NCBI GenBank assembly: GCA_963924565.1
Contig: OZ004612.1
Coordinates: 12,152,001-12,216,000 of the forward strand
Reading direction: 5' to 3'
Length of the DNA: 64,000 nucleotides
Source: Ascidiella aspersa
Taxonomy: Eukaryota
The position numbers and the translations under genes were made by a program. A model generated the notes under the pieces. The model was given only the letters and a program-made list of their open reading frames with translations, was not told the DNA's origin and did no database searches. Of the stretch, positions 8,501-50,184 are shown piece after piece. Every line of letters starts with the position of its first letter. Position 1 is the first letter of the stretch.

Positions 8501-11500
8501 TCACTGCACTTTGAAGCTTTGCGTTTATTGGAAACAGGCTGACCTTTGAGCAGGAATATTTCCTCCTCGTCGCTGTCCGAGATTATTCGAGAAGAGTCAA
8601 TCGGAGCCTGGTAAACTAAAGGTGCTTGTGGTATTGAGCGCGTTCTCGGTCTACCGCGGCGACCGGTCGCCTTCGGCGTTTTGCTTGTCGAAGTTCGCCT
8701 GCCACCAGAGGGCACATAGTCATCGTCACTTAAGTCGTAGTCAGCACGGGAAGCGGGCTGGCCTCTGCGCAACGGCACGGCGACATAATCATCATCATCG
8801 TCGTCCTCGTCAAAGTCAGAATCATCCTCCGCAATTCTTCTTCCTTTTCTTTTTCCGGAGCGAGTGCCTCCGCCTCTCTTGGAGGTCGATTGGCTTCGTG
8901 TTGTTCTGCGGCCACGGCCTGATACAGTTTTGCGAGGTTTTCGCTTCCGCCCAATTGTGAAATCCTCATCGGATCCGGAGAGATCTGGAACATATTCCTC
9001 TTCCTCTTCTTCCTCCGGTTCAAAACTGGGATCCTTGATGACATCTTTCAGGTTCTCTTCTTCCTGCTCATTTTCGATCTCCTCCACTTCCATTTCCCCT
9101 TCCTCCTCATCTTCTGCAAGATGAATACAAAGTAGTTTTACTAATGATACACAAACTGTAAGTGTTGGTCAAAAAGCAGCTTTAGAAGGGCTAGATCACA
9201 GTTCTTAACACACATATGTGTGTGCATGTTTCATTGAATAATGATATGGTACTGCAGATCCAGTTCAATGTGAAGTATCTTGTACTAATAGAATGTGGCA
9301 AGCATTGGCGTATGGTTGTTTCTCGACTCGCTCCTATCTGAGCCGGTGTAGCTCAGTTGGTACAGCGCCGGTCCTGGCTTGGCCGGAGGTCGTGAGTTCG
9401 AGCCTCACTGCCAGGATAGTTGTTTTTCTAGCCTGCCCTACTTGTATCATTGATCAACAGATTTGGTGAGTCTGCAATAGCTTGCGGTGTACAAAGTAGA
9501 ATGCACACACGCACAAACACACACACAGGATAAAGTATAAATAACAAGCAAACTGTAAAAAAATTTACTAAATTCACTTACTGGAAACCGAAATATATAT
9601 AATAGGGTAACTTTAAAAACATTTTGTTATCAAAACAGCAATTTAAAAGAAACAATTAAGTATTTTAATGAAAGAGTCTCTGATTTATATGCAGATCAGG
9701 TCCGACTTTTGAGGCTGTAACTTCTTACATATTTATGTATCATAGAACTTTGTTAAATAGAACCTACCCATAACCTTGCCAGTTGGCCTTTTCTTGATTG
9801 GAGAGTTTGAGTATCGACTTGGTTTGGCTTGAGTAACTTCTACTGAACCTTGATGAGAAAAATTGGAAAATAAAATTTGCTGAAACAAATGTATAAAAAA
9901 GTTATTTGATAAACAAAAAACACAATGTGTGTCCAATAGCCATCATGACTTCATAAAGATGATTTGTTTTATTGTTAAGACCTCCGAAAAATTTTAAAAT
10001 ATTTTCAAAGAATGATAAAACCATGAAACAGAAAAACGCCTTTAAAATATGTTTGACCAAACTTGAAAACAAAACTTTATCTGGCGTTGTAGTAATTAGT
10101 TTACTAAAACAATTATTTCGGTGATCATGAACATTAACAAAACTATAATTTGCTATTTTTCTTTGGTAAATAGGTACTTTATATCTTTAATTTAAGCTTT
10201 TATCTGGTAACTCCTACTGTATTTTACTTTGACGAAAATATCTGTAAATTTGTATTTCATATTAAATCAACATTTGAAACATTATGTTTTACATGCACAT
10301 AGTTACTTCAACAAAAAGCAGCAACAAATTCTTTTGTAGTACTTAAGCTTATGTATGTATATTAGCTGTAAATCCTACTATCCTGGTTTAACCTAACATT
10401 ATAATGTTGGACATTGAATGCCTTGCAGGGTCAGTTTTCTCATGAACTTCAGACATTGAATAAAAACATTCAACAATTCAATCCAAGCTTAAATTACACT
10501 TATCTTGCAATATTACCCACCATTCTTGCCAGGGTTATTTATTTGTTGTGTGTTCATTTCTGGAGGTGCTTTGTTTTGTCTAAGAACCGGTTGGCCCTGG
10601 AACAATTCCGCTTCGTTGAAATCCTCGGAGAAGTCTTCCTCCAAATGGACAACTCCCATCGAGTCCTTTGGTTTGGGCATCAGGACTGCGCAGAATAAAA
10701 TGTAAAATACATAAGAGTGGTGACTAGAAAGTATTCAAATATTGAGCATTGTATCCAGTTATTAATAATTATCCAGGCAATGTTTTAAAACACAAAAATA
10801 ATAACAACCTAAGTAGAGGATAATTTAACAGGGAAATTTGAAGTTTAAATTTCTCAATGTGCAACAGATAAATAAACCTTGCAAAACATTTTTGTTTATT
10901 GTCTTTGTGAAAAATAACAAACTCCTATGTCTCATGTTATTGATTGGCCTTCTTCTGAATAAAAACACATAAAAAAAACAGTTAAGGTTAGTACTCACCA
11001 CTGTTATTGTTGGCAGACCATTGTTTATGGACACTTTGGGGATTGACGGCATACTGTTGTGGCTGGGGAGGAGGGGGCTGTGAAAGTTAAAAAGTACATT
11101 TTTTTGTATCCCATGAAAATAACATCTTTGTTTTTAAATAATTGTTACATGGATGAGTTTTCATGGCCATGCATATGTATTTCATAATTGATTTCCTAAT
11201 TTTGTACAAACTAATATTGGGCTTGTGGTATATATGTTTGGGTTTTTTTCTATATATGAAATATTGCTTCAATAAAAGTTACAAACCAATACTTTAATAT
11301 TAAACCAGATTGTCTTGTCAGGGATTTTGATTTGGTCATGATTTGTCTTTAAGTAGACACAAGGATATTTTTGTGTTTACAACACTAAAGCAAATACCTA
11401 CTTGTACCATGGGTGGTCCAGTTGTGATGACAGACTGTGGTGGCATAGGTTGTCCTGCTAAAAAAAAAACATTGGTAAAGGTTAAATTAAGGGTAAAACA

Positions 11501-38132: not shown

Positions 38133-38153
38133 AAATTCTGTACGACAGAAATT
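38133..38153 (-). promoter_or_regulatory. CDE-like 3'UTR stem-loop (Roquin/Regnase-1 type)
   Basis: In the mRNA, UUCUGU-CGU-ACAGAA forms a 6-bp stem with a Py-Pu-Py triloop directly after the stop codon. Confidence 0.35.
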
Positions 38154-38202
38154 CATTCCAAGTAGTTGATTCGGGCGAGTCCCGAAGCGGCGTTGAAGCG
38201 CA

Positions 38203-38275
<73 letters not shown>

Positions 38276-41200
38276 TTGACCAACGGCGGGGTGCAGGGGC
38301 GGCAGGTTGAGGTTAAGTTTGCCGCTTCCGTTACCACCGCTGTTGTTGCTGTTGTTGCTGCTGCTGCAGACGTTTGGATGCATGTAGCGCCGACCCACGC
38401 GCAGACGTTCGCAGATCTGCAAAGATACGATGAGACGCGTGGTAAACACGACCAACGAGCACTTAATATAGCCGTCCAGCTTTTAAGTTTGCGCCCTGGT
38501 TGCAGGAGTCTATTATTAAAGTATTGGTTGCGCGAGACAAACATCGGACTGTAACTTCAGGCGAATGGAAAATTTAGGCGACGGGGTGTGTGTAAATGAC
38601 GTGTTACATTAAAAGTATGTCGGGCTCTCAAAAATGTTAAAAAAAAACAGTATTATGCTTTAGATGTGTTATTGGTCATTCACCCTAAAGAAGGCGATTT
38701 GAATAGGTTGCCAAAATGTTGGTTAACAATTACAATTACCAGACGAGCTGTTTTGATTATAATTACTGAGAATATTATATTATAAAAACACGCATACGGG
38801 CGACACTGTGTAATTTCCACGAGAAACTTTTTAGTTTTACTTTGCTTACCTGCGCGTTAGTGGTGGAGAGCAGTTGGAAGGGAAACTGGTTCTGGTGGTT
38901 CTTGGCGGAAGGGTCAGCGTCGTTGTCCAGGAGCAGGTTAATGATCGCGCTCTGCGCCTCAGCCAACTGAACGTTGTTGGCCACTTGCAGTTCTGGGCGT
39001 AAAAACATTGACTTGTTAAAAATGGCATTTCTAAATGCTGGTGGGTTCTGCCGCTTTAGATTAAAATGCCATAGTCTGAACACATCAAATAGAATTGGAC
39101 TCTCGTTTTTGTCCTACTTCGCCGAAAAAGGTACTCAATTATTTTTCCAATCATTTAAAATGGCAAAGGGCGTGGACTAAATATTTGATTCAATTGTTTA
39201 ATTTTTAAACAACAGTTTTTGCAAAAACATCCTGGTCAGGAGCGGCCAAATTTTTTGCACTATATTCCCAAATTATGTAAGTGATAGATAATCGAAAAAA
39301 TATAAATAAACCATTTAACGACACAAGTCCTGGCGTTTCGGGGGCGCCACAAATAGTCGTGCTCAATTTCGACCCGCCAGCTCACTTTAGCAATTAAAAA
39401 AGTTACAGTTCGCCGTCTGGCTTTCGAGCACGCCGCTCAGGCACGACTGAACAGTAGTCGCATTGAAAAGGCGTTCGCGCTCTTAGGTTTTCCGCGAATT
39501 AAGCGCTATTGACGTCACCATGGCGCGTCTTTTCCGCAATTGTAGCAGACCAGCACTAACTGATTGCAGTGGCGTTTCTGCTTGTAGTGCCTTATCTGGA
39601 TTTACCGCGAACCGATATAGCGTGCTAATGTACAACAGGGCAACTTAGCAAGCCCTTTTGGAGATTACAGGCGCTTTCCACCTAGTTTGATTGCTTAGCG
39701 TACGCCGCTACATTTTCTGGCAACTCGTATAGGTTGCTCTAGTCTAATGAAATAATAAGATTTCCTATAGCGATTTAACTTGAAAATATAAGGCACCGAA
39801 ATACTGTTTGTTGCATCCCATCTACAGTGAAAAGTTAGTTTTCACAAGGCGGGATATAAGCTGCATTAAAACAGGACATCTGAACAATTTTGTCGTAAGT
39901 CTAAATGCGTAACACAAGCCGCCGCCGGTGCTAGTTGATGCCAACCGGCTGCATAAGAAATATCTTAAAAATAGGCCCAGAGCGGCGCCGCGGGCACCAC
40001 TCGATAGGACAGGCCATCACAGGAAGACCTCCCATTTTACAACGCGGCCTGCCTCACCGCACATTTTCACGCCACGTCTTTCTTTTCGTTTTCGACGGTT
40101 TTAATTGGTGGAGCGCCTGTTTGTCGACCGCACGATCCTAAGCGGTATATGAAGGGCACATCGGTTCGCTACGGTTGTTTTTCTGCGTTCAACATTGCGC
40201 AATCTGACACCGGCGTTTTCACGGAAAAATCACTAAAGCTGCGCACGAGGACGCTGAAACAAACTGGAAAATTTGCGATTGAATTTCAGTGTTTGTTGAA
40301 ATACTCGAAGTCTCAAGCGTATGGCATATGGCAAGAAAAGCGCACTACAGAGTATCCGGTAACAGCGGGGTAGGCATATAAGCGGCCAAAACGTCATCAG
40401 CACAACTTATGACATCACTACATCAACACATGACGTCATTCTTAATTTCGGGTGCCACTTACCAGCAGCAAAGTGCAGCGCTGTGTTCTCGTTGTGCGCG
40501 CACTGGCCGACCACCTTCCGCGCGGCGTCGGTGTCGCGTTGCCGAAGTCGCTTGCAGCTGTCGCGTGTCGCGCAGCCGTACGCGGCGAAGCTGAGGATTT
40601 CGCGCGTCGCGACAAGGTCAGAGTTTTTAACGGCCATGTGCAGAGCCGACCAGCCTCCGCGCTGTTCCTGTGAAGATAAAAAAGGTTGGTCGTCGTTAAT
40701 TGACAGCGCGCCCGCGTTTCGTGCGAGAAAAACAAACAAGGGCGAAAAATCGCTTTCCCTTTTTTTACACGCGAACTGATAGCGAAATTTAGTGGCTCGG
40801 GCAAATGTCAACAGCGCCAGAGCTAATAAGTCAGTCAAAAAAACTCACGCAAATCAATTCTAATAGTCTATTTTTATCTATAAAGATTTTAATAAAATAA
40901 AAAATAGTTTTAAGTGGCTACATTGCTAAAAACAGGAAAGCCGAAAATCGATAAATATGCAATCGTTAAAACAACTATATAGCACTAGTTAACGCTCTTA
41001 AGAGAACTAAAAATTTTGCACATGTCACTGTTAAAGGTTTTGAAACAGAATTACTCCGCTAGCGTATATCGTGGTTGCAATGAGGGTCCGTGATCCTTAC
41101 CTTTGCAGTGAGCGACGCTCCTTGCCGCATCAGGGTCACCATGCTGTCGATTCTACCCTTCTCGGTGGCGATGTGGAGCGGTGTGCGTCCTTAAGGAAGC

Positions 41201-44200
41201 AAGAACAAAAAAACGGGATCAATGTCGGGTAAGGGCGGGCGCTAAATCACAATCTGTCGCTGGCAATGTGAAAATGCAAGAAGGACCAAGGCAAAGACAA
41301 TGACTCGACCCTCGCCGACAGCCGTTGACGGAGGACGCCGAGCTATATTCGATTGTGGCAACCAAGGGATGAATACCGCGTCTTATTTGAATAAACAAAT
41401 GAAGCTTACCGGCTTTCAGGGCGGCGGTTCCGTTGCACAGGTCGGCGAACTGCTGTGGCGCCTTCTCGGCGAGGAAGTTCTGCGTTAAAGAGAGCGCAGA
41501 AGGTTAGAGAATGTCGATTGTTCTGTATATATAGAGAGTATAAAAAGCGACCTTGTGCAACGCGCTATAAATAGACTGGGGGGAACTGGCCATGCAAATG
41601 TTATTTCGGACGCCATTCTTTCCGAAAATAAACGTCCGCGCTGGCGCGACCCAAACGGCATTAACATAGCCGAAGCGTCAAAACAACACAATAAACCCAT
41701 GCGGTAAATGCCAGACGACGGCGCGTCGTTTTTCAGCCATTAACATGAACGCTGCGCCAGAAAAACGGGAAAAGGGCGTTGGCTTCCGCAAAGCATGAAG
41801 CTGCGGGCTTTTCATATGAGTCTAGACGCGCGCGTGTGACTTTTTGTTGCCCGAGTTGACGAACGTCGTAAAAAGCCATTAACCCCGAATAATTGGCAGC
41901 CGAGAGTAATTCGCCAAGCGAGGTGACTAAAAGACCTGCGATATTTTTTCGGCATCGTGGCCTGCATTGCACGGCTAATGCCGCGCTTGCCCGCGAGCCG
42001 GTCGCGGCGTGATGAATTATTAAAAAGTTCGACCCGCGGTGGCACAACATGGCACGCGTTTTGCAAAACAACCGTCGAACATGTAATGTTGGCGCTGCAG
42101 AAATACGATCTGGGCGATTAGCGTTTGAGGTTCGTATGTGGTAAACCGATCAGTGTTTTTAAATATAAATTAAATGGTCGTTTTATGGGGGTATTTTTAA
42201 TTATGTAGAATAATATCACGATTTCTTCTTTTTTAAAACAGGAACATTTAAAATATTTTAATATACAGAGTTTTTTAAACCTATACAACACATTACCACA
42301 TGAACAACAAAGTGCTTCCAGCAACTTACCATCATATCGGAGGCTTCCAGTTCGGCGGCCAGGTGAAGGATGTTCTGTCCTTCGGCGTCCTGCGCATGGG
42401 TGTCGGCTCCCCAGCGCAGCAGCACGCTCGCCTTTTCCACGCTACTCGTCTTCACGGCGTAGAGCAGCGGAGTCTGTATAAAGCATAGAGAGCCTTGTGA
42501 GTTTGGCAAATCGCTGCTATTTATGTATAATGTGTTTTGAGAAGATGGACATCGCCTTGATTCACATTTTTAGCATTACAATTAACCTATGTCTTATTAT
42601 ATTTAGTAATGTATAACAGAGTGATTTTTACTCTACATAGTAGCAGTAGCAACTACCCCAAACCCAACGAAAGTACAGGCAGCCTGGATGTTCGCAGCGT
42701 TTCAAACAGAGCTATATCCTTCTTTTGCAGCGCTATCGTTTACATTGATTCATGGCGGCGACAGGGAAACAATAAAGCGAAAGAATACAGACTCCCCCGA
42801 TCGTAATACCGGGCGCAATGTTGGGACCGATATGACGACGAATGGGACGCCTGGAGCGGTGTATGACAGCAAAATACACGCGCGCCCTCTTAAAAGCCTG
42901 TTTTGAGAGCTCCCAGAGTAAACCTTCGCCTTGGATAGAGGCAACACGCGACACTATTTTTTCCATTGTCACTTCAAAGAGAGTGGAGATATGTCTAATA
43001 TGCGAGCGAAATCGCTTGCTATTTTGGAATGTAGGCGATAAAAACGGGATAGAGAACGAGACTCTTTTATCAGTTTCAGACATCGCGTCTAGCACCTAGA
43101 CCCCCAGCACATCACACAAAATCGATATACCCAGAACCACACATGACGCCCTGTTTTGACGTCCACTCTTCACTGATTTAATTACTTGATCTCAAAGCCA
43201 GCTAAGCTCGAAATGTTAAGCACCTGTTTCGCGTGTAACGTTTATTCGTTCAGCTAAAAGTGGACTTGGAAATGACACTAGGCGCACGCCCGCCGCTTAA
43301 GATGAAGACCGACGTCAAACGCGCATGGACAGTCGTTCTCACAAATGCAAACTGCAGTCACGGCGACACGTATTGGCTCCGAGCGCCAGACGCGAACCTC
43401 AAAAATTGTTATTTCGCGGAAAAAGGCCATTAAGCGCCCTTGCCAAAGAAACACCCTCAAACGCAGCACCGCTGCTTGTCGCCAGCAAAAATAACAAACA
43501 CGCTCTCATGACGATTTGGGATGATTGTTAAATCATAACCTTGACTACAGTACATATGCATTACTAATTGAATGTAGAACAACGACAAGAAGTTTCCAAC
43601 CGAGCAAAATGTCATCATACTAATCGCATAAAAATCTGAGGCTATAGTTATTTAAGGCTATAGAACAGCGGTTCTCAACCAGTGGGTCATGGATCACTGG
43701 TGGGCCATAAGAACATTTAAGGTGGGCCACAGACCAATTTAAAAAGCTAGATTTAGTTTCATTTGTGTCATTATATTTAATTTTACAGGAATAATGGCTT
43801 GGGGAGGAATTAAAAAGGAATGTAAATTTATTGTTCAGCCATAAGTGTCTTACTAATGCACGGTTGAATAAATAATCTTTTTTAAAATATGTTCTGCTGT
43901 GTTTTGTTCTAAACCTATTTTAAGGCTTTCCTTTCATAAAAATTCTATTGGTCACAGAATTTTTTGCAACGTAAATGGGCCACGAGAGAAAAAAGGTTGA
44001 GAACCACTGCTTTAAAGTTATTTAAGGTTTTGTAAATTCAGGTATAATCATATAGCCATTGGAGACTCAAAACTGGTCGCATTTCATTTTTTGCCAGTTT
44101 CGCTTCACGAAAAAAAAAAAAAAAAAAAAAGTGCGAAAGCCAAGAAAAAAAAAACGTTACTTGCGAAGAAAAAAAATAGCGGTATGATGCAAATACACGC

Positions 44201-47200
44201 GACATGACGACCTCTTCCGTGACCGCACGTCGTGGTCGGGGTCTGACTGGTCGCGAGCGTCGCGAGCCCTTACACATGGAGCTACACGAAAAACCAGTTT
44301 TAACACACTCGATCTCTTTTTTTTAGCAACAAGCGCCGCGAGACCGGAAGAGCGCCTTGTTACGTCACAAAAGAAGAAGCGTCGCGCCTCGCGCCGTTGT
44401 TGGAATGGACCGCAACTGTCTTACCTAACGCCGCCCTGTTTCTAGATACTACATCACGGGAGTCGGCGAGCTGTTTATGATTTCTGCCCGCCACTACCTT
44501 TTGGCGCACGTAATGAATTACTAACCCGAAGAAATATAAGTTGTTCCAAACGAAACTAAAACAAAAAACTTAACTTAGTAACTATATATTTTTAGGATAG
44601 GGCTCTTCTCTGTACAGTGTACGTTTTCGTTACCTTTCGCCGCAAGTCCTAAATTCCCAAGAGAGAACGGTTTTGATAAAAACTGTGAAATGTCGCAAAT
44701 GGCAGCCTGCCAAAAATATACGCTTGGAAATTCCCGAATGCAACACAGAGATTTCATCATTTGAATGACTTGGCTAAAGCAACAGTAATTCCCGTTTTCA
44801 AAAGACCTTTCCAAACTTCCGTGAATACCGTTGAATAAAACTGATATGGGTTTTCCAAAGTGATCACCGACAAGGATCTAACCCCATGCCCTTTAACCCA
44901 CCCGCCCCTGAGCCACTGGCAACCCCAAAGGCGGGCTAAGTTTACGCCATGATGTCATATTCGCAGTGTCTCGGCAAGGGGTGTAAAAATTCCGCCGAAA
45001 CAAAGAGGCCTCTAAGCGGCAACGAGGGCGAATGGCGGCCCCAAGACAATGGCGCCGGATTTCCTATTACTACTTGTATATTGGCCGGCGAGCAGAAGTC
45101 TAAAATCAACCTCAGCGTCGGCTAAAAATAGATCGATGAGCTATCGCGGACTCAACGAGCACTCGACAATGGCGAAATTTACGCGGCGCCGAGAAGCGCA
45201 GGTAGCAGCAGGTCCTCAAACGCGCGCCGATTCTGAAAGGAAAATTTCCCGTTTCGCACGCGCCAGAGCGTGACCCCTTTTTTTCTGTCATTTTCGCGAC
45301 GGGATTTTTTTCGTTCCTCCAAAAAGCACGCGGCAAAAAGAAGCGCCCGCGACCAGCGGAGGTGAATATAGCTACGAACTATTAAAAAGACTGAAAAATA
45401 TTGAACCGAAAGGAAATGCCCGGGTCGTGGCCTAGATCGCGATCTTGCAAGTAAATTTCCCAGGTTTTGTTCGTCGGCAAAGCACAGCGGGCAAAGCCGG
45501 GCTTTGTCACGATTTCTGCTGGCGGCGTGAGGAATTAGCGACGAGGCGAAACAACGCCAGAAGGCTCAGGCACGTTTTCGGGCTTACTATGCGCTCGGCG
45601 TCTGGGAAAATTTGCGCAGACGCGAGTTTTTTTCGAGGCACTTTCGGGCGCCTCGAGGCGGTCGACGGTAGCTTGGTTTTCTCGTAGTTATTTGTAATTG
45701 GCTAAAACTCCTTTAGGCTGCCGAAGCCCTTCGACAGTCGTGAAGGTTGAAAGCTTGCGGTCTGCCAGCAGCACGAGGCCGTGGTGACACGAGCGCTGCC
45801 AATCAGACCACGCCACCTTTCTAGCGCCCCTTCTAAATCAAAGGCTAAACACTGGTGGCGCATCGACGTTAGGGTGATTTTCGTGCTGACTTTAAGCGCT
45901 CTATTCGAGGAGACAGACACGTCAAAAAGCGACCATCTTTTAGTAGGTTTCGTGTGCTTTCACCCAACCCTATCGTTCGGCATCCTAATAAACGTCGGTG
46001 TTCGTTTAATTATCTGTAAAACAGAACGAAGTGCAGCGCGGGATGCGAAGCAAACAAACGAACGGGAGAACCGGTCCGGGAATTCTATGTATAGGGCCGA
46101 AATGGGATGGCGTAGGTCGAAAAGCGCGCGCCCACGGTGTTCCCCGACTAAGTTAAATATCAACCAATGCGTTGCCGCTTTACAGGGTTTTACAGGCTTG
46201 TGTAAAACCAGACTGACAAGAAGGCAGGCTGGGCACGCACCCGTGGCCCTAAAGTACACACTTTAAAGAATTTGCCATATGCGTGTCGCGAACGCTGCAA
46301 TACCTTTGACATTTGCGCTTTTAGCACGGGCTGTTGCTGCCTGTTGTTTGCTTTAGTTGGGCTGTACGGCAAAGGTAAACCCAATTTGTTTTGCCTGCGG
46401 GATTCGCGATGTTATACCGCTCTTGGTTCTCAATGCAACTTATCAGGTCTATTTTTTTAATCTTAATCTGCGTGACGACATAAAACGGATTAAGAAAAGA
46501 GCAAACTGGAAAGACAGCGTTGTCAGTTGCCGGCCGCAAAAAGACGATATGCAGCGTGAATGCAAAACCGTCTATTGCACGCGGCGAACACGATCTAGCG
46601 CGCAGAAATTCCTCCACGTTTTCGTTTAGTTTTAACCCAGTGGAACGAATCCGACCGCCGTAAAGCGCTAAATCTGGCGGTTTTGGCATCCGCGACTACT
46701 TTTAGCTTGACAGTGAAACTGTGCAAATTTGGAAATGACGGGCCTTTCACCGATTAAAAGAGTACGCCAGTGCGAGTGAAGGCTACTCGGTCCCACTGCG
46801 GCAGCGCGCATGCAATTAGGGATGCCTGAAACGGGAGACGCGGGAGATGACAAGTTGCGGATGGCGTCGGACATATCCTGAATCCTGGTCGGGTGGTTTA
46901 GATGCAAAACGGCCTAGATAGGGTTGCACAGAGACCCTTCAAGGGTAAGAAAGAGAAAGGCGCTTCAGAAACCCTGAGATGCTTGGCTAAAAACAAGTTT
47001 TTAGCTTTTTGTAAAAGTAAAATCCTAAACCACAGGTTGCAAAATACATTAAAAATGTTGAGGGTTTTACGCGTATTTTAAACATATGTATACCTCGTTT
47101 ACAGGCATCAGCCGTAAATGCTGAAGTAAAAGCATAAACCGGCACCCTTCTGGGCTAGTTAAGGTTAATGAAAAGGGGTGCCATCGATCCGTGTGCCGCG

Positions 47201-50184
47201 TCATGGCCGTTGACATTAATTCGCCGCTCGTTCTGCACTTTTGGCTGGCATTTCGCGACACAATGCAACCCAGAGCGGCACGTCGCGCGTGTAAAGCCGC
47301 CGTCTAAGTCGTGCTTTTCTATTTCAAAAGAAGAAAAAAAGGGACAGCCCCATTGGTGTCGAGTGCAAGGCGTTAGGTAACGAAACATTGCAACATTCCA
47401 TTTTCGTGCCTTCTCATCGATGTAGGTACAGGGGTTCTTAAACAGGGTCCATGAACCCCTTTGGGGTCCGTGAACTAATTTTAGGGGTCCATGAAGGCCA
47501 AATTAAAATATTAGTGTATATTTAAGAAGTTATCAATTTTTCAAAGAAAAGAGTTTAATAAAAAATAAAACGTTTTAGGAATGTACTTTGATGGGATTGT
47601 GCCGTCATTTTTGAAAATTTCTTGCCTACCGTGGCCCACGCGAAGCAAAAAAATTAAAAAATTAGGGTCCGCGGTAAAAAAAATTAAGAGCCTCTGATGT
47701 TGGTCGATAGGCGTGCGGAATATCAAAGTAGAACATTTATTAAGGCTAAAAGGTTGGCCTATAGCCGCGACTCACCATCCCTTTGGCGTCCTTTAGGTTA
47801 AGCAGGTGCTGCAGATCAACGGCGGATTGCATCTGTCGCAGGTTGGCGATTAGGTTCTGGACACTGTCGCAGATCACCGCTCGGACGACGGCGCCCAGCA
47901 TGTCTGCCAGGCTGCTGTCGTGGCCTGGAGAAACAAAACGTTGCGTCAGTGCCCCAGGCTAACAAGCCTAAACACGCGCGCTCGAAAACGGCACCAAACA
48001 AGCTAGACTTGCACCCAAGGACTACAACCGACTGTTTTTAATGCACAAATAGACGCGAATAACCGCTGCTTACCTGAAACAGGAGCGTAGCTTGACGACG
48101 ACATGAAGGTCACATTTGTGTCTGGAACAAAAAACGAAATATTAATTATAACTGACCGGCCTAGTTTTTATAAAAGTGGAAACAATATTTACCGAATGCC
48201 TGCGAGTTATCGAGACACGAATAGCTCGGAGGAAAGCTGGCAGCGGCGCTGGCGAAATTTTGACTGGTGACGAAGCTTTGCAGGTCGGTAAACTCCGGGG
48301 GCGGGTAGGCGGGCTGGGGGCTGAAAGCGGGGTTGCTGGGGGTTTGGTAGGGTGAGTTGCAGGACACGCTGGAAGCGGCGGGGCTCATGGTTTGGATAAA
48401 GCCGGGGTCGGATCCCATTTGTGCGCCGCAATTCGGGATCTGATCGAAAGCCATGACGTTGGGAGAATGCTGCATCGACATTTCGCCCAGCGGCGAGGCG
48501 TAGGGCCGGCCTACGAGACTTTGGGGGTAAGCGCAATCGGGGAGATTGGAAGGGGGAGGGGTGGAGGAGTAGTTGGAGGTGGGTGAGGGGTAACCGATAT
48601 TGTGGCCCATTGGTGGGGAGGCAACCGGCTGAAAGGGGTCCACGGCCAGGCGCTCCAAGTACTCGGGAGCGATCGGCTGTTGGTTGCCGGGGGAAACGGC
48701 GAAGTTGTTCGGGGACTGGTTTATGAGTGGGTTTTGTGGCTGGAAGGTGGCAGCCCTTGGCTGCTGCTGCTGCGACATGGATGCGTGGCCTGAGGGCCTA
48801 TTAGCGGCTTTCTAAAAATAAAAATAAAAGTAATTAGAAAAAGGTTTTAATCAAGAAATATTGACAAAATATTAATCATTAAATTTTATTCAATAGGTAT
48901 TAAGTATTTAGCGTTAATTTAAGTGGGCAAATATTGATCCACTTATGTTGACCTACCGCTGACTGTCGCAGTTGCTGAAGTACTTCGCGTACTGTTTTCG
49001 GTCTCACTCCAGGGTACACAACTGCAGTTAAAAAATAACACTTTACGGTAAAGGATAAAACGGCAAAAAACGTGGTATACAACTAGAATTTAAGCATATT
49101 CATCACCTTGCAATATGCATATTATAAAAACGTGTGGGCACGAAACTTTTCTGCGATGTTAAAGGAAAGTAATCGAGGCAAAAAATTAACATCTAACCAG
49201 GTCGATTTCCTTCGCTGCGTTTGGCTTGGCTCATCTTTCGCTTGGCTGAAGTCTGTCTCGGTTTACCGTTTCCCGTCTTGGGCTGCAGGCAGCGCTCGAG
49301 CTTCAGGCTAAAACCGCAATAAGCCAGCATAATGTTAGAGGTAGTACACAGTGCATATCATGGCTACATGGATTCCATAGGACGAATGTTGGGCGCGAAG
49401 TAAAGTTTTAAAACAATTGTAGGTTACTGCTGAACTTACACAAACAATCTGTACAAAAAACCTCCGGGGGGCCTAACTTATATTACCAACAAGTGGCGCG
49501 TGGTGGATGATTTGAATGCAAGCGCGCCCGTCATATCATGTAATTAACCACCTGCGCGTCACTCTGTTTAAAGGTAAACCCACGCTGCATATCAACGCAT
49601 CGGTCGACTTATTTTAATTTATCGAAGTAAACGTCGCGGGCTTACATTTGCTTGCTGTTCAGGTCGACGCCGCGCAGACGCCTTTGGCTCGGGTTGGCTC
49701 GCTTGCGATTCTTGGCGCCGGGGAGGGTTTTGTCGACGCCTGGTAGCTGTAGATTGCGGACTGTTGCAGTAGGGTTAGTGCTATTGTTGACGGTCGGTTC
49801 GATCGATTCCAAGAAGCTGTCTATTTCTTGGAATTGGCAGTCGCTGTCGACTTTGTGCAGGTTGAACGCAGTTGGCTTGCTGTCCACCAATTGATCGCGA
49901 AGGTAGCTACTGGCGTCGTAGGCCAAGCCCGGCTGGTTATATGGCCAGGCGCTGAATGGCGGGCGGCCTTCCGTGTATTCTCCGGCGCAGAAACTTTTGG
50001 TGACGAAGTGGGATTCCGGGGGACTTTCCAAGGCGGCGGCGACGAACGTGCCGTTGTTGTTGCCTTTTCGCAGTTCCTGGATAGTGGGCGAGTGGGGTGA
50101 AAGGCCGATGCCTGAGTCGTCGCTTCCAGACGGGCTGGGAACTTCGCCTTGAAAGTTTGAAAAGGCGACCAACGCTTCCATCAT
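38153..50184 (-). CDS. NFKBIZ: Nuclear (atypical) IkB of the IkB-zeta/IkBNS type; 12 exons, 814 aa
   Basis: Exons 50184-49646, 49307-49198, 49021-48957, 48811-48193, 48121-48074, 47924-47776, 42473-42330, 41479-41410, 41189-41101, 40667-40463, 38992-38850 and 38416-38153. All are GT-AG with consistent phases, totalling 2445 nt. Ankyrin repeats: TPLLYAV, NILHLAA, GRTPLHIA, GWSALHMAV, NTALHFAAELQ..AQSAIINLLLDNDADPSAKNHQNQFP. The last resembles recalled IkB-zeta NTALHVAASLQ..GADPSTRNLENEQP. There is a long Pro/Ser/Gln-rich N-terminal half. Confidence 0.82.
38204..38278 (-). repeat. Coding (CAA)2(CAG)23 polyglutamine tract (Q25)
   Basis: Plus strand reads (CTG)23(TTG)2, in the last exon of the IkB gene. 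Confidence 0.95.
43666..44009. mobile_element. hAT (Charlie-like) MITE in IkB intron 6
   Basis: TIR CAGCGGTTCTCAACC / GGTTGAGAACCACTG. The TSD is degenerate (CTATAGAA vs CTTTAAAG). Confidence 0.75.
44726..46087. promoter_or_regulatory. Intronic NF-kB site cluster (candidate autoregulatory enhancer)
   Basis: GGAAATTCCC at 44726, GGGTTTTCC at 44848, GGAAAATTTCCC at 45239, GGAAATGCCC at 45412, GTAAATTTCCC at 45451, GGGAAAATTT at 45604 and GGGAATTCT at 46078. GAS-like TTCCGTGAA at 44817. Confidence 0.55.
47429..47696. mobile_element. hAT MITE
   Basis: CAGGGGTTCTTAA ... TTAAGAGCCTCTG with near-TSD ATGTAGGT / ATGTTGGT and GGGTCC repeats. Confidence 0.6.
48957..49021 (-). other. 65-nt exon 3 encoding an OCA-like POU-binding peptide
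   Basis: Translates as VVYPGVRPKTVREVLQQLRQSA. The frame is fixed by the phase-1 donor of exon 2 and the phase-0 acceptor of exon 4. Confidence 0.7.

What the first reader, a model, noticed from the sequence alone, without database searches (positions are those of the whole stretch)
48957..49021. OCA-like POU-coactivator peptide on its own small exon in an invertebrate IkB-zeta-like gene
Seen in sequence: the exon encodes YPGVRPKTVREVLQQLR, and splice phases on both sides lock this frame. Established knowledge: vertebrate OCA-B/OCA-T1/OCA-T2 (YQGVRVKxxVK(E/D)LL) and IkB-zeta (FQGVRVKNSVKELL) use this motif to dock on POU2F-octamer DNA complexes. Here the GVR core and the amphipathic helix (VREVL) are kept, with V->P and a linker one residue shorter. 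Inference: an OCA + ankyrin dual NF-kB/POU coactivator may predate vertebrates. The ORF track alone hides this.
Basis: partly seen in the sequence, partly recalled or inferred. Interest (0 to 1): 0.9.

Follow-up and report, generated by a model that had tools for sequence, protein, structure and literature searches.

The report
OCA-like exon in tunicate IkB gene
A small coding exon, fixed in one reading frame, in an IkB-type ankyrin gene of a probable sea squirt encodes an imperfect copy of the short peptide that vertebrate OCA coactivators and IkB-zeta use to dock on POU2/octamer DNA. If it works, that link is older than vertebrates, but its expression, conservation and binding could not be tested here.

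Summary
Window 49021..48957 (minus strand) is a 65-nt exon with canonical AG/GT borders. Its GC is 52%, against 33% and 21% in the flanking introns. Exon 2 and exon 4 each have one open frame, and these force the reading (V)VYPGVRPKTVREVLQQLRQSA. Skipping the exon or using the other open frame gives an immediate stop.

The host gene has about 12 exons: a conserved DSGxxS degron, basic clusters, a Q/P/S-rich arm and about six ankyrin repeats.

Against the published consensus (R/K)xYQGVRVKxxVK(D/E)LLxx(K/R)R:
- Kept: Y, G, V, R, K, V, E, L and the terminal R; the helix K is R.
- Changed: Q->P, V->P, L->V at a position that tolerates no substitution in OCA-T1, K/R->L (Ile in IkB-zeta), and a linker one residue short.

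Chance odds run from 3e-5 (motif-weighted score) to 9e-3 (plain alignment to OCA-B). PF09310 and PDB sequence searches do not detect the peptide. The genome has a class-2 POU gene that keeps all six OCA-contacting POUs residues, and no other OCA-like motif.

The scan had not noted this on other DNA.

The parts
48957..49021 (-). Exon 3 (65 nt, phase 1 in, phase 0 out), encoding (V)VYPGVRPKTVREVLQQLRQSA: the OCA-like peptide
   Evidence: AG/GT borders, forced frame and GC step. Motif score 37 against 10 or less in the other exons.
48964..49017 (-). Core of the motif, YPGVRPK-TVREVLQQLR: a coil half (YPGVRPK) and an amphipathic helix half (TVREVLQQLR)
   Evidence: Local alignment to the OCA-B peptide printed in a paper. 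Contact map taken from the POU2F3/OCA-T structures.
49646..50184 (-). Exon 1 coding part (ATG at 50184; donor AT|GTAAGC, phase 2)
   Evidence: Open frame and donor. 52-53% identical to P0001, a 144-aa ORF from another species that ends at the same ...DLNSKQM-stop.
50098..50118 (-). DSGIGLS, a beta-TrCP-type DSGxxS degron of the classical IkB kind
   Evidence: Read from the exon 1 translation. GSDDSGIGLSP is identical in P0001. Assignment as a degron is inference from the known IkB-alpha/beta/epsilon motif.
49672..49713 (-). Basic cluster KNRKRANPSQRRLR (looks like a nuclear localisation signal)
   Evidence: Exon 1 translation; function inferred.
49198..49307 (-). Exon 2 (110 nt, phase 2 in, phase 1 out), the basic stretch ...KPRQTSAKRKMSQAKRSEGNRP directly before the motif
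   Evidence: Only one open frame, canonical splice sites.
48193..48811 (-). Exon 4 (619 nt), a Q/P/S-rich low-complexity arm that may be a transactivation region
   Evidence: 206-codon open frame starting in phase 0. No Pfam hit and no homologue.
48074..48121 (-). Exon 5 (48 nt)
   Evidence: Splice sites and phases worked out by hand.
47776..47924 (-). Exon 6, a helical segment before the ankyrin repeats that ends in the start of ANK1 (..LNLKDAKGM)
   Evidence: Single copy in the genome.
42330..42473 (-). Exon 7, ANK1/ANK2 (TPLLYAVK...GQNILHLAAELEASDMM)
   Evidence: Pfam Ank/Ank_2/Ank_3 hits, ankyrin hits in PDB, junctions.
41410..41479 (-). Exon 8 (70 nt), second half of ANK2; the only phase-compatible candidate with strong splice sites
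   Evidence: Enumeration of AG..GT open exons with phase 0 in and phase 1 out.
41101..41189 (-). Exon 9, ANK3 (GRTPLHIATEKGRIDSMVTLMRQGASLTAK)
40463..40667 (-). Exon 10, ANK4 with a roughly 30-residue insertion, plus the start of ANK5
   Evidence: Pfam Ank hits, junctions.
38850..38992 (-). Exon 11, ANK5/ANK6 (..LQVANNVQLAEAQSAIINLLLDNDADPSAKN..)
   Evidence: Phase-1 acceptor and GTAAGC donor.

Best explanation
Exon 3 is a real coding exon that cannot be skipped, in a single-copy IkB-type gene of a probable ascidian. The gene encodes an N-terminal DSGxxS degron, basic clusters, the OCA-like peptide, a Q/P/S-rich arm and about six ankyrin repeats. The peptide is most likely a diverged homologue of the OCA motif of vertebrate IkB-zeta. 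In the proposed mechanism (inferred, not shown) the coil Y-P-G-V-R-P-K lies in the major groove over the centre of an octamer site bound by the animal's class-2 POU factor. The helix T-V-R-E-V-L-Q-Q-L-R packs its V/L/L face on helix 1 of the POU-specific domain, and its last Arg pairs with the conserved Glu. The ankyrin repeats would bind NF-kB/Rel, so one protein would bridge kB and octamer sites. Shown here: the exon anatomy, the forced frame, the motif match and its odds, and the presence of POU2 and Rel genes. Inferred: homology, expression and binding.
For: Anatomy: canonical splice sites, a single frame forced from both sides, a stop if the exon is skipped, and a GC step.

Motif: the consensus (R/K)xYQGVRVKxxVK(D/E)LLxx(K/R)R is published. 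The exon keeps these OCA-T1 positions:
- Y13 and R17, which form a pi-cation pair;
- G15;
- V16, whose backbone amide reads adenine 5;
- K19, which needs a positive charge;
- T21 and V22;
- D24, as E;
- L26;
- R30, which tolerates no substitution.
The missing residue sits at H20, the most tolerant and least conserved position. K29 is Leu here, Ile in IkB-zeta, and K29L is tolerated in OCA-T1.

Odds: the motif-weighted score is 37, against 10 or less in the other N-terminal exons and 29 or less elsewhere in the six-frame window. Shuffles of the 507-aa N-terminal residues reach it 7 times in 200,000 (3.5e-5) with a gap penalty of 4, 0 times in 100,000 with no penalty, and 90 times in 100,000 with a penalty of 11.

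Partners: a class-2 POU gene lies on G000 C1. Its POUs exon scores about 90 bits to Oct-1/POU2F3 against 73 bits to class 3, and it keeps L188, E189, L191, E192, L235 and L237. Two Rel-homology loci are present.

No other candidate in the genome: there are no hits to GVRxKxxV[KR][DE]LL, and no PF09310 match on the OCA-motif part of the profile or above its cut-off.

The animal is probably a tunicate (GH6-like hit).
Against: - No RNA evidence could be obtained.
- Conservation of the exon is untested. The only relative found covers exon 1 alone.
- Pfam PF09310 and phmmer against PDB, which holds OCA-B and POU2F3 entries, do not report the peptide even at E = 10.
- A plain BLOSUM62 local alignment to OCA-B scores 33. 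Shuffles reach that 174 times in 20,000, and one unrelated ORF in the window equals it.
- L25->V sits where all substitutions were deleterious in OCA-T1.
- V18->P removes a side chain that contacts thymines 5' and 6'. Q14->P is a further change in the coil.
- The linker between the DNA-contacting coil and the POUs-contacting V22/K23 is one residue short.
- The relaxed pattern that fits this exon also has one control hit genome-wide.
- NFKBIZ orthology is not shown, and the conserved DSGxxS degron is a classical-IkB feature.
- The conserved POUs residues need not imply an OCA partner. From memory, they are also kept in insects, which have no known OCA protein.
Confidence: 0.4

Rival explanations
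1. Chance look-alike. The exon is real, but its peptide is simply a basic, amphipathic stretch next to the gene's basic clusters, for example part of a nuclear import or retention signal or some other protein contact. It has no descent from, or function like, the OCA motif.
For: A plain alignment to OCA-B is reached by 0.9% of shuffles and equalled by an unrelated ORF in the same window. Family and PDB searches report nothing. The relaxed DNA pattern has a control hit genome-wide. At 7e-8 per residue, roughly one such match per two proteomes is expected (derived). Four conserved positions are changed and the spacing is off. The exon follows a basic stretch, KRKMSQAKRSEGNRP.
Against: The match lies in the N-terminal arm of an IkB-type ankyrin protein, the one protein class outside POU2AF known to carry an OCA motif. 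Within that arm the motif-weighted odds are 3.5e-5. The residues kept are the ones that are structurally and mutationally critical: Y/R pair, G, V16, K19, V22, L26, R30. The K/R->hydrophobic change mirrors IkB-zeta.
Confidence: 0.35
2. Decayed relic. The peptide descends from an ancestral OCA motif shared with IkB-zeta but has lost POU/octamer docking in the fast-evolving tunicate lineage. It is kept only because the exon is needed to hold the reading frame.
For: L25->V at a substitution-intolerant position, V18->P, Q14->P and the shortened linker. The exon cannot be skipped without a stop, so it would persist whatever the motif does.
Against: If the motif were unconstrained, tunicate sequence divergence would be expected to erase it. 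Exon 1 is only 52-53% identical to its one known relative, and exon 4 finds no relative at all. Yet 9 of the 14 fixed positions (Y, G, V, R, K, V, E, L, R) are still identical and two more are conservative changes (K to R, L to V).
Confidence: 0.2
3. Not an expressed exon. The gene model is wrong here, for example because transcription starts downstream at the Met in exon 4, or because other exons are used.
For: No transcript evidence was obtainable. Exon 4 contains an in-frame ATG (MSQQQQ) that could start a short isoform.
Against: There are strong splice sites on both sides. The exon is the only way to link the single open frames of exons 2 and 4. Its GC content is exon-like between AT-rich introns of 176 and 145 nt. 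Exon 1 and its donor are conserved in another species.
Confidence: 0.05

Closest known systems
OCA motif of vertebrate IkB-zeta (NFKBIZ; PROSITE PDOC52003; Alpsoy et al. 2024, as cited)
   Same: A short N-terminal peptide in an ankyrin-repeat IkB protein with a long N-terminal arm. It shares the Y/F-x-G-V-R-x-K coil followed by a V-[KR]-E-x-L-x-x-hydrophobic-R helix. The position that is Lys/Arg in POU2AF proteins is aliphatic in both (Ile in IkB-zeta, Leu here).
   Different: Q->P and V->P in the coil, L->V in the helix, and a linker of one residue instead of two. The motif lies after the basic clusters. The host protein also has a classical DSGxxS degron. Orthology to NFKBIZ is not shown, and binding is untested.
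OCA peptide of POU2AF1/2/3 (OCA-B, OCA-T1, OCA-T2); structures 1CQT and 9PFN/9PFO/9PFP
   Same: The consensus (R/K)xYQGVRVKxxVK(D/E)LLxx(K/R)R is matched at Y, G, V, R, K, V, E, L and the terminal R, with R in place of the helix K. The predicted coil-plus-helix layout is the same.
   Different: There is no ankyrin domain in POU2AF proteins. PF09310 does not hit this gene or, convincingly, this genome. A 2026 review places the origin of OCA-B in jawed fish and reports no lamprey orthologue.
Classical IkB proteins (IkB-alpha/beta/epsilon, Cactus)
   Same: An N-terminal DSGxxS degron, conserved in the one known relative, and about six ankyrin repeats.
   Different: The degron lies about 480 residues upstream of ANK1. 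The long Q/P/S-rich arm and the OCA-like peptide are not features of classical IkBs.

Membership tests
OCA motif (published consensus (R/K)xYQGVRVKxxVK(D/E)LLxx(K/R)R; PROSITE PS52003) | Coil Y-Q-G-V-R-V-K that crosses the major groove | tested here: inconclusive
   The exon has YPGVRPK. Y, G, V, R and K are identical; Q->P and V->P. V16, the Y13/R17 pair and K19 are kept. V18, which contacts thymines, is lost.
OCA motif (published consensus (R/K)xYQGVRVKxxVK(D/E)LLxx(K/R)R; PROSITE PS52003) | Two-residue linker between K and the helix-start V | tested here: not met
   There is one residue (T) instead of two. The canonical spacing has no hit anywhere in the genome.
OCA motif (published consensus (R/K)xYQGVRVKxxVK(D/E)LLxx(K/R)R; PROSITE PS52003) | Helix V-K-(D/E)-L-L-x-x-(K/R)-R with an invariant last Arg | tested here: inconclusive
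   The exon has V-R-E-V-L-Q-Q-L-R. V, E, L26 and the last R are kept, and K->R. L25->V is at a substitution-intolerant position. K29->L is tolerated in OCA-T1 and parallels Ile in IkB-zeta.
OCA motif (published consensus (R/K)xYQGVRVKxxVK(D/E)LLxx(K/R)R; PROSITE PS52003) | Recognised by a family profile or sequence search | tested here: not met
   No Pfam PF09310 hit at E <= 10. phmmer against PDB finds no OCA chain. PF09310 against the genome does not hit this locus. The PROSITE profile itself is not available here.
OCA motif (published consensus (R/K)xYQGVRVKxxVK(D/E)LLxx(K/R)R; PROSITE PS52003) | Match beyond chance in the protein that carries it | tested here: inconclusive
   On the motif-weighted score P is 3.5e-5, within a range of <1e-5 to 9e-4 depending on the gap penalty. 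On a plain alignment to OCA-B P is 9e-3, and the score is not unique in the window.
OCA motif (published consensus (R/K)xYQGVRVKxxVK(D/E)LLxx(K/R)R; PROSITE PS52003) | DNA-dependent ternary complex with a class-2 POU domain on an octamer with A at position 5 | not testable with these tools
   Only the partner's presence and its contact residues could be checked.
OCA motif (published consensus (R/K)xYQGVRVKxxVK(D/E)LLxx(K/R)R; PROSITE PS52003) | Conserved in orthologues | not testable with these tools
Three word-based protein searches and two metagenome scans found nothing.
IkB-zeta / nuclear IkB (NFKBIZ, NFKBID, BCL3) | C-terminal block of 6-7 ankyrin repeats | tested here: met
   Pfam Ank, Ank_2 and Ank_3 hits on two exons, ankyrin hits in PDB, and about six repeats in the hand-built model.
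IkB-zeta / nuclear IkB (NFKBIZ, NFKBID, BCL3) | Long N-terminal arm (about 450 aa) with a nuclear localisation signal and a transactivation region before the repeats | tested here: inconclusive
   The arm is about 510 aa, with basic clusters and a Q/P/S-rich exon. This is architecture only; function is inferred.
IkB-zeta / nuclear IkB (NFKBIZ, NFKBID, BCL3) | Sequence orthology to NFKBIZ rather than to other IkBs | tested here: inconclusive
   Exon-by-exon searches return only generic ankyrin or DARPin hits, or nothing. No tree could be built. The joined protein was not searched, by instruction.
IkB-zeta / nuclear IkB (NFKBIZ, NFKBID, BCL3) | No signal-dependent DSGxxS degron (by established knowledge, nuclear IkBs lack it) | tested here: not met
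   DDSGIGLS is at residues 22-29 and identical in P0001.
POU2AF (PF09310, PD-C2-AF1) | Match to the family profile | tested here: not met
   No hit on any exon. The best genome hit is 19.1 bits, below the cut-off, on another contig and in the C-terminal part of the profile.

The most novel reading that the evidence does not exclude
The OCA docking peptide arose in an IkB-type ankyrin protein before tunicates and vertebrates split. A single NF-kB/POU2 bridging coactivator would then predate adaptive immunity, and the vertebrate POU2AF genes, currently dated to jawed fish, would be later offshoots of that peptide.
Probability: 0.3. Interest if true: 0.8.

Novelty: new variant of a known kind. 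Interest (0 to 1): 0.55.

Why it matters
The OCA peptide is regarded as a vertebrate device. A 2026 review dates OCA-B to jawed fish and finds no lamprey orthologue, and the motif in IkB-zeta was recognised only in 2022-2024. None of the eight full-text searches run here turned up a report of it outside vertebrates. A working copy in a tunicate IkB would:
- move the NF-kB/POU2 bridge to the base of tunicates plus vertebrates;
- point to the IkB copy as the older one;
- provide a natural variant (prolines in the coil, a shorter linker, Val for Leu) that shows how much change the DNA-dependent interface tolerates.
If it is a chance match, it is a useful caution about short-motif resemblance.

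Tried and rejected
- Orthologues:
  - The search of protein representatives with exon 1 gave one hit, P0001, an unspliced exon-1 ORF on a 1344-nt Logan contig.
  - The search for homologous proteins with exon 4, with the ORF around exon 3 and with exon 1 all found nothing; its length window would exclude full-length relatives anyway.
  - A metagenome scan with the exon 1 alignment, and one with a back-translated exon 3 pattern, found nothing.
All searches were exon by exon.
- Family recognition: Pfam and PDB searches with the peptide found no OCA hit. PF09310 against the genome gave nothing convincing.
- IkB subfamily: PDB and ESM Atlas searches with single ankyrin or pre-ankyrin exons gave only generic ankyrin hits or nothing.
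- Paralogues: exon 3 and exon 6 are single copy.
- Other OCA-like sites:
  - Q-G-V-R-V-K occurs 9 times in the genome against 10 in the control.
  - Three of the four true-Arg hits have F or Y before the Q.
  - The regions fetched around those three (L022-L025, reaching 3-10 kb from each hit) hold no helix half.
  - The one site looked at in DNA (C4) has a poor acceptor. I treated these as chance.
- Complex prediction: run on the POUs exon piece with a 30-residue stretch around the peptide that includes 8 intron-derived flanking residues, without DNA and without POUs helix 4. It returned 'no answer', which is evidence neither way.
- Octamer and kB consensus sites in the window are at chance frequency.
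- The paper by Alpsoy et al. 2024 is not held, and the structure paper has no supplementary mutational-scan tables held.
Full report
**What is there.** The finding sits on the minus strand. The sequence reads gtgttattttttaactgcAG | TTGTGTACCCTGGAGTGAGACCGAAAACAGTACGCGAAGTACTTCAGCAACTGCGACAGTCAGCG | GTAGGTca. This is a 65-nt exon at 49021..48957 with a pyrimidine-rich acceptor and a GTAGGT donor. Codons from 49019 give VYPGVRPKTVREVLQQLRQSA.

**The surrounding model, built by hand.**
- Exon 1: coding part 50184..49646, donor AT|GTAAGC.
- Exon 2: 49307..49198.
- Exon 3: the finding.
- Exon 4: 48811..48193.
- Exon 5: 48121..48074.
- Exon 6: 47924..47776.
- Ankyrin exons: 42473..42330, 41479..41410, 41189..41101, 40667..40463 and 38992..38850, followed by a poly-Gln tail.

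**Why the frame is fixed.** Exon 2 is open in one frame only and ends with a lone G. Exon 4 is a 206-codon open frame that starts in phase 0. The lone G plus TT gives Val, and the exon is then read as VYPGVR... Joining exon 2 straight to exon 4 reads Glu-Ser-Arg-stop (the reading shown). The second open frame of the exon can only be reached from an acceptor 19 nt upstream, and it then enters exon 4 out of frame. GC is 52% in the exon against 33% and 21% in the two short flanking introns, the same step seen at the other exons.

**The host gene and the animal.**
- Exon 1 encodes MMEAL...GSDDSGIGLSP..., a DSGxxS degron of the classical IkB kind, and a basic cluster KNRKRANPSQRRLR.
- Exon 2 is basic, and exon 4 is Q/P/S-rich.
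- Pfam ankyrin families hit two downstream exons. The model gives about six repeats after an arm of about 510 residues.
- This is IkB-like, and in its proportions IkB-zeta-like. No search tied it to NFKBIZ by sequence: single exons return only generic ankyrin or DARPin hits, or nothing. The spliced protein was deliberately not assembled or searched.
- The only relative found anywhere is P0001. It is a 144-aa ORF on a 1.3-kb Logan contig, 52-53% identical to exon 1, with GSDDSGIGLSP identical and the same ...DLNSKQM-stop end. So the gene and the exon 1 donor exist in at least one other species, but that says nothing about exon 3.
- The genome is 308.6 Mb. Other agents' notes call it a sea squirt, and a GH6-like hit just above the Pfam cut-off fits a tunicate cellulose synthase.
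- Two Rel-homology loci are present.

**The motif against what is known.** The published consensus is (R/K)xYQGVRVKxxVK(D/E)LLxx(K/R)R. OCA-B reads ARPYQGVRVKEPVKELLRRKRGH. A local alignment gives YQGVRVKEPVKELLRRKR over YPGVRPK-TVREVLQQLR. I mapped this onto the POU2F3/OCA-T1 structure and its mutational scan.

Kept:
- Y13 and R17, which form a pi-cation pair.
- G15.
- V16, whose backbone amide reads adenine 5.
- K19, which needs a positive charge.
- T21.
- V22, which makes backbone bonds to the POUs turn.
- E at D24.
- L26.
- R30, which tolerates no substitution.

Conservative or tolerated:
- K23->R.
- A27 and E28 to Q, on the solvent face.
- K29->L. K29L supports growth, and IkB-zeta has Ile at this position.
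- The missing residue is at H20, the least constrained position.

Against:
- Q14->P.
- V18->P, which loses the thymine contacts.
- L25->V, at a position where every substitution was deleterious.
- A span between the DNA-contacting and POUs-contacting residues that is one residue shorter.

**Is it more than chance?**
- A position score built from the consensus, trying linkers of 1-3 residues, gives 37 for this exon. The gene's other N-terminal exons score 10 or less, and the rest of the window in six frames scores 29 or less.
- Shuffles of the 507 N-terminal residues reach 37 at a rate of 3.5e-5. The rate is under 1e-5 with no gap penalty and 9e-4 with a penalty of 11.
- A plain BLOSUM62 alignment to the single OCA-B peptide is much weaker. 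The score of 33 is reached by 0.9% of shuffles and equalled by one unrelated ORF in the window.
- Pfam PF09310 and phmmer against PDB do not see the peptide.
- Genome-wide, the canonical pattern GVRxKxxV[KR][DE]LL has no hit. The one-shorter pattern hits only this exon, but its reversed control also hits once.
- The peptide alone would therefore not stand out in a proteome. Its weight comes from where it lies: in frame, in the N-terminal arm of an IkB-type protein, the only class outside POU2AF known to carry the motif.

**The partner.** A class-2 POU gene lies on contig C1.
- Its POUs exon reads ..[51 protein letters not shown]. It scores about 90 bits to Oct-1, Oct-2 and POU2F3 against 73 bits to class 3.
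- Further exons encode SFKNMCKLKPMLERWL and RKRKKRTSID.
- All six POUs residues that contact OCA-T1/2 in the crystal structures (L188, E189, L191, E192, L235, L237) are present.
- This is necessary but weak evidence, since those residues are widely conserved in class-2 POU factors.
- No second OCA-like gene was found. The best PF09310 hit is 19 bits, elsewhere in the genome and in the wrong part of the profile. QGVRVK strings occur at the control rate and have no helix half in the regions fetched around them.

**Verdict.** The exon and its frame are real features of the sequence. I put the odds as follows:
- about 55% that the peptide descends from the same motif as in vertebrate IkB-zeta;
- about 40% that it also still docks on POU2/octamer complexes;
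- about 35% that it is a chance look-alike in a basic region;
- about 5% that the exon is not expressed.

**Novelty.** The literature held here dates OCA-B to jawed fish, with none in lamprey. It describes the IkB-zeta motif only in vertebrate proteins. An nfkbiz homologue is named in sea urchin, but no motif is mentioned for it. If real, this would be a new, diverged variant of a known motif in a new lineage, which matters for the origin of the NF-kB/POU link.

**Limits.**
- The complex prediction gave no answer.

**Earlier notes of the scan.** They concern this same window only.

Noticed in passing
window 50098-50118 (-), and protein P0001: The DSGxxS degron (DDSGIGLS) and its flanks, GSDDSGIGLSP, are identical in the only relative found, although exon 1 overall is only 52-53% identical. 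This is a classical-IkB feature on a protein built like a nuclear IkB.
   Followed up: partly
window 9342-9416 (+): A tRNA-like gene: Rfam tRNA at 36.8 bits, called tRNA-Ala with anticodon GGC by ARAGORN.
   Followed up: no
window about 38153-38455 (-): A long CAG tract downstream of the last ankyrin exon encodes about 24 Gln in one frame, poly-Ser and poly-Ala in the others. It probably forms a poly-Q C-terminal tail of the same gene.
   Followed up: no
window 50020-50029 (+) and 44726-44735 (-): Two perfect kB consensus sites lie inside the gene: GGGACTTTCC within exon 1 coding sequence and GGGAATTTCC in the 5.3-kb intron 6. The window-wide count (3) is at the chance level of 2.4.
   Followed up: partly
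window 41592-41599 and 44187-44194 (+): Two exact octamers (ATGCAAAT) lie in introns of the gene. The window total of 7 matches the chance expectation of 6.2.
   Followed up: partly
window about 49110-49125 (-), intron 2: The string tataatATGCATATtgcaagg, an octamer-like palindromic AT-rich element, lies about 90 nt upstream of exon 3. It was seen by eye only.
   Followed up: no
L016 (G000 C3:18300729), L018 (C4:22259349), L021 (C7:13814785): Three of the four genomic Q-G-V-R-V-K strings with a true Arg codon are preceded by F or Y (KFQGVRVK, KYQGVRVK, HFQGVRVK). None has a V[KR][DE]xL helix half in the regions fetched around them (L022-L025, reaching 3-10 kb from each hit). The one site looked at in DNA (C4) has a poor acceptor. 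They are probably chance.
   Followed up: partly
G000 C1:35293594-35303898 (-) (L001, L009, L010): A class-2 POU gene is spread over at least 10 kb. The POUs domain is split after ..RFEALNL, and the homeodomain starts at ..RKRKKRTSID. It is the natural partner to test.
   Followed up: partly
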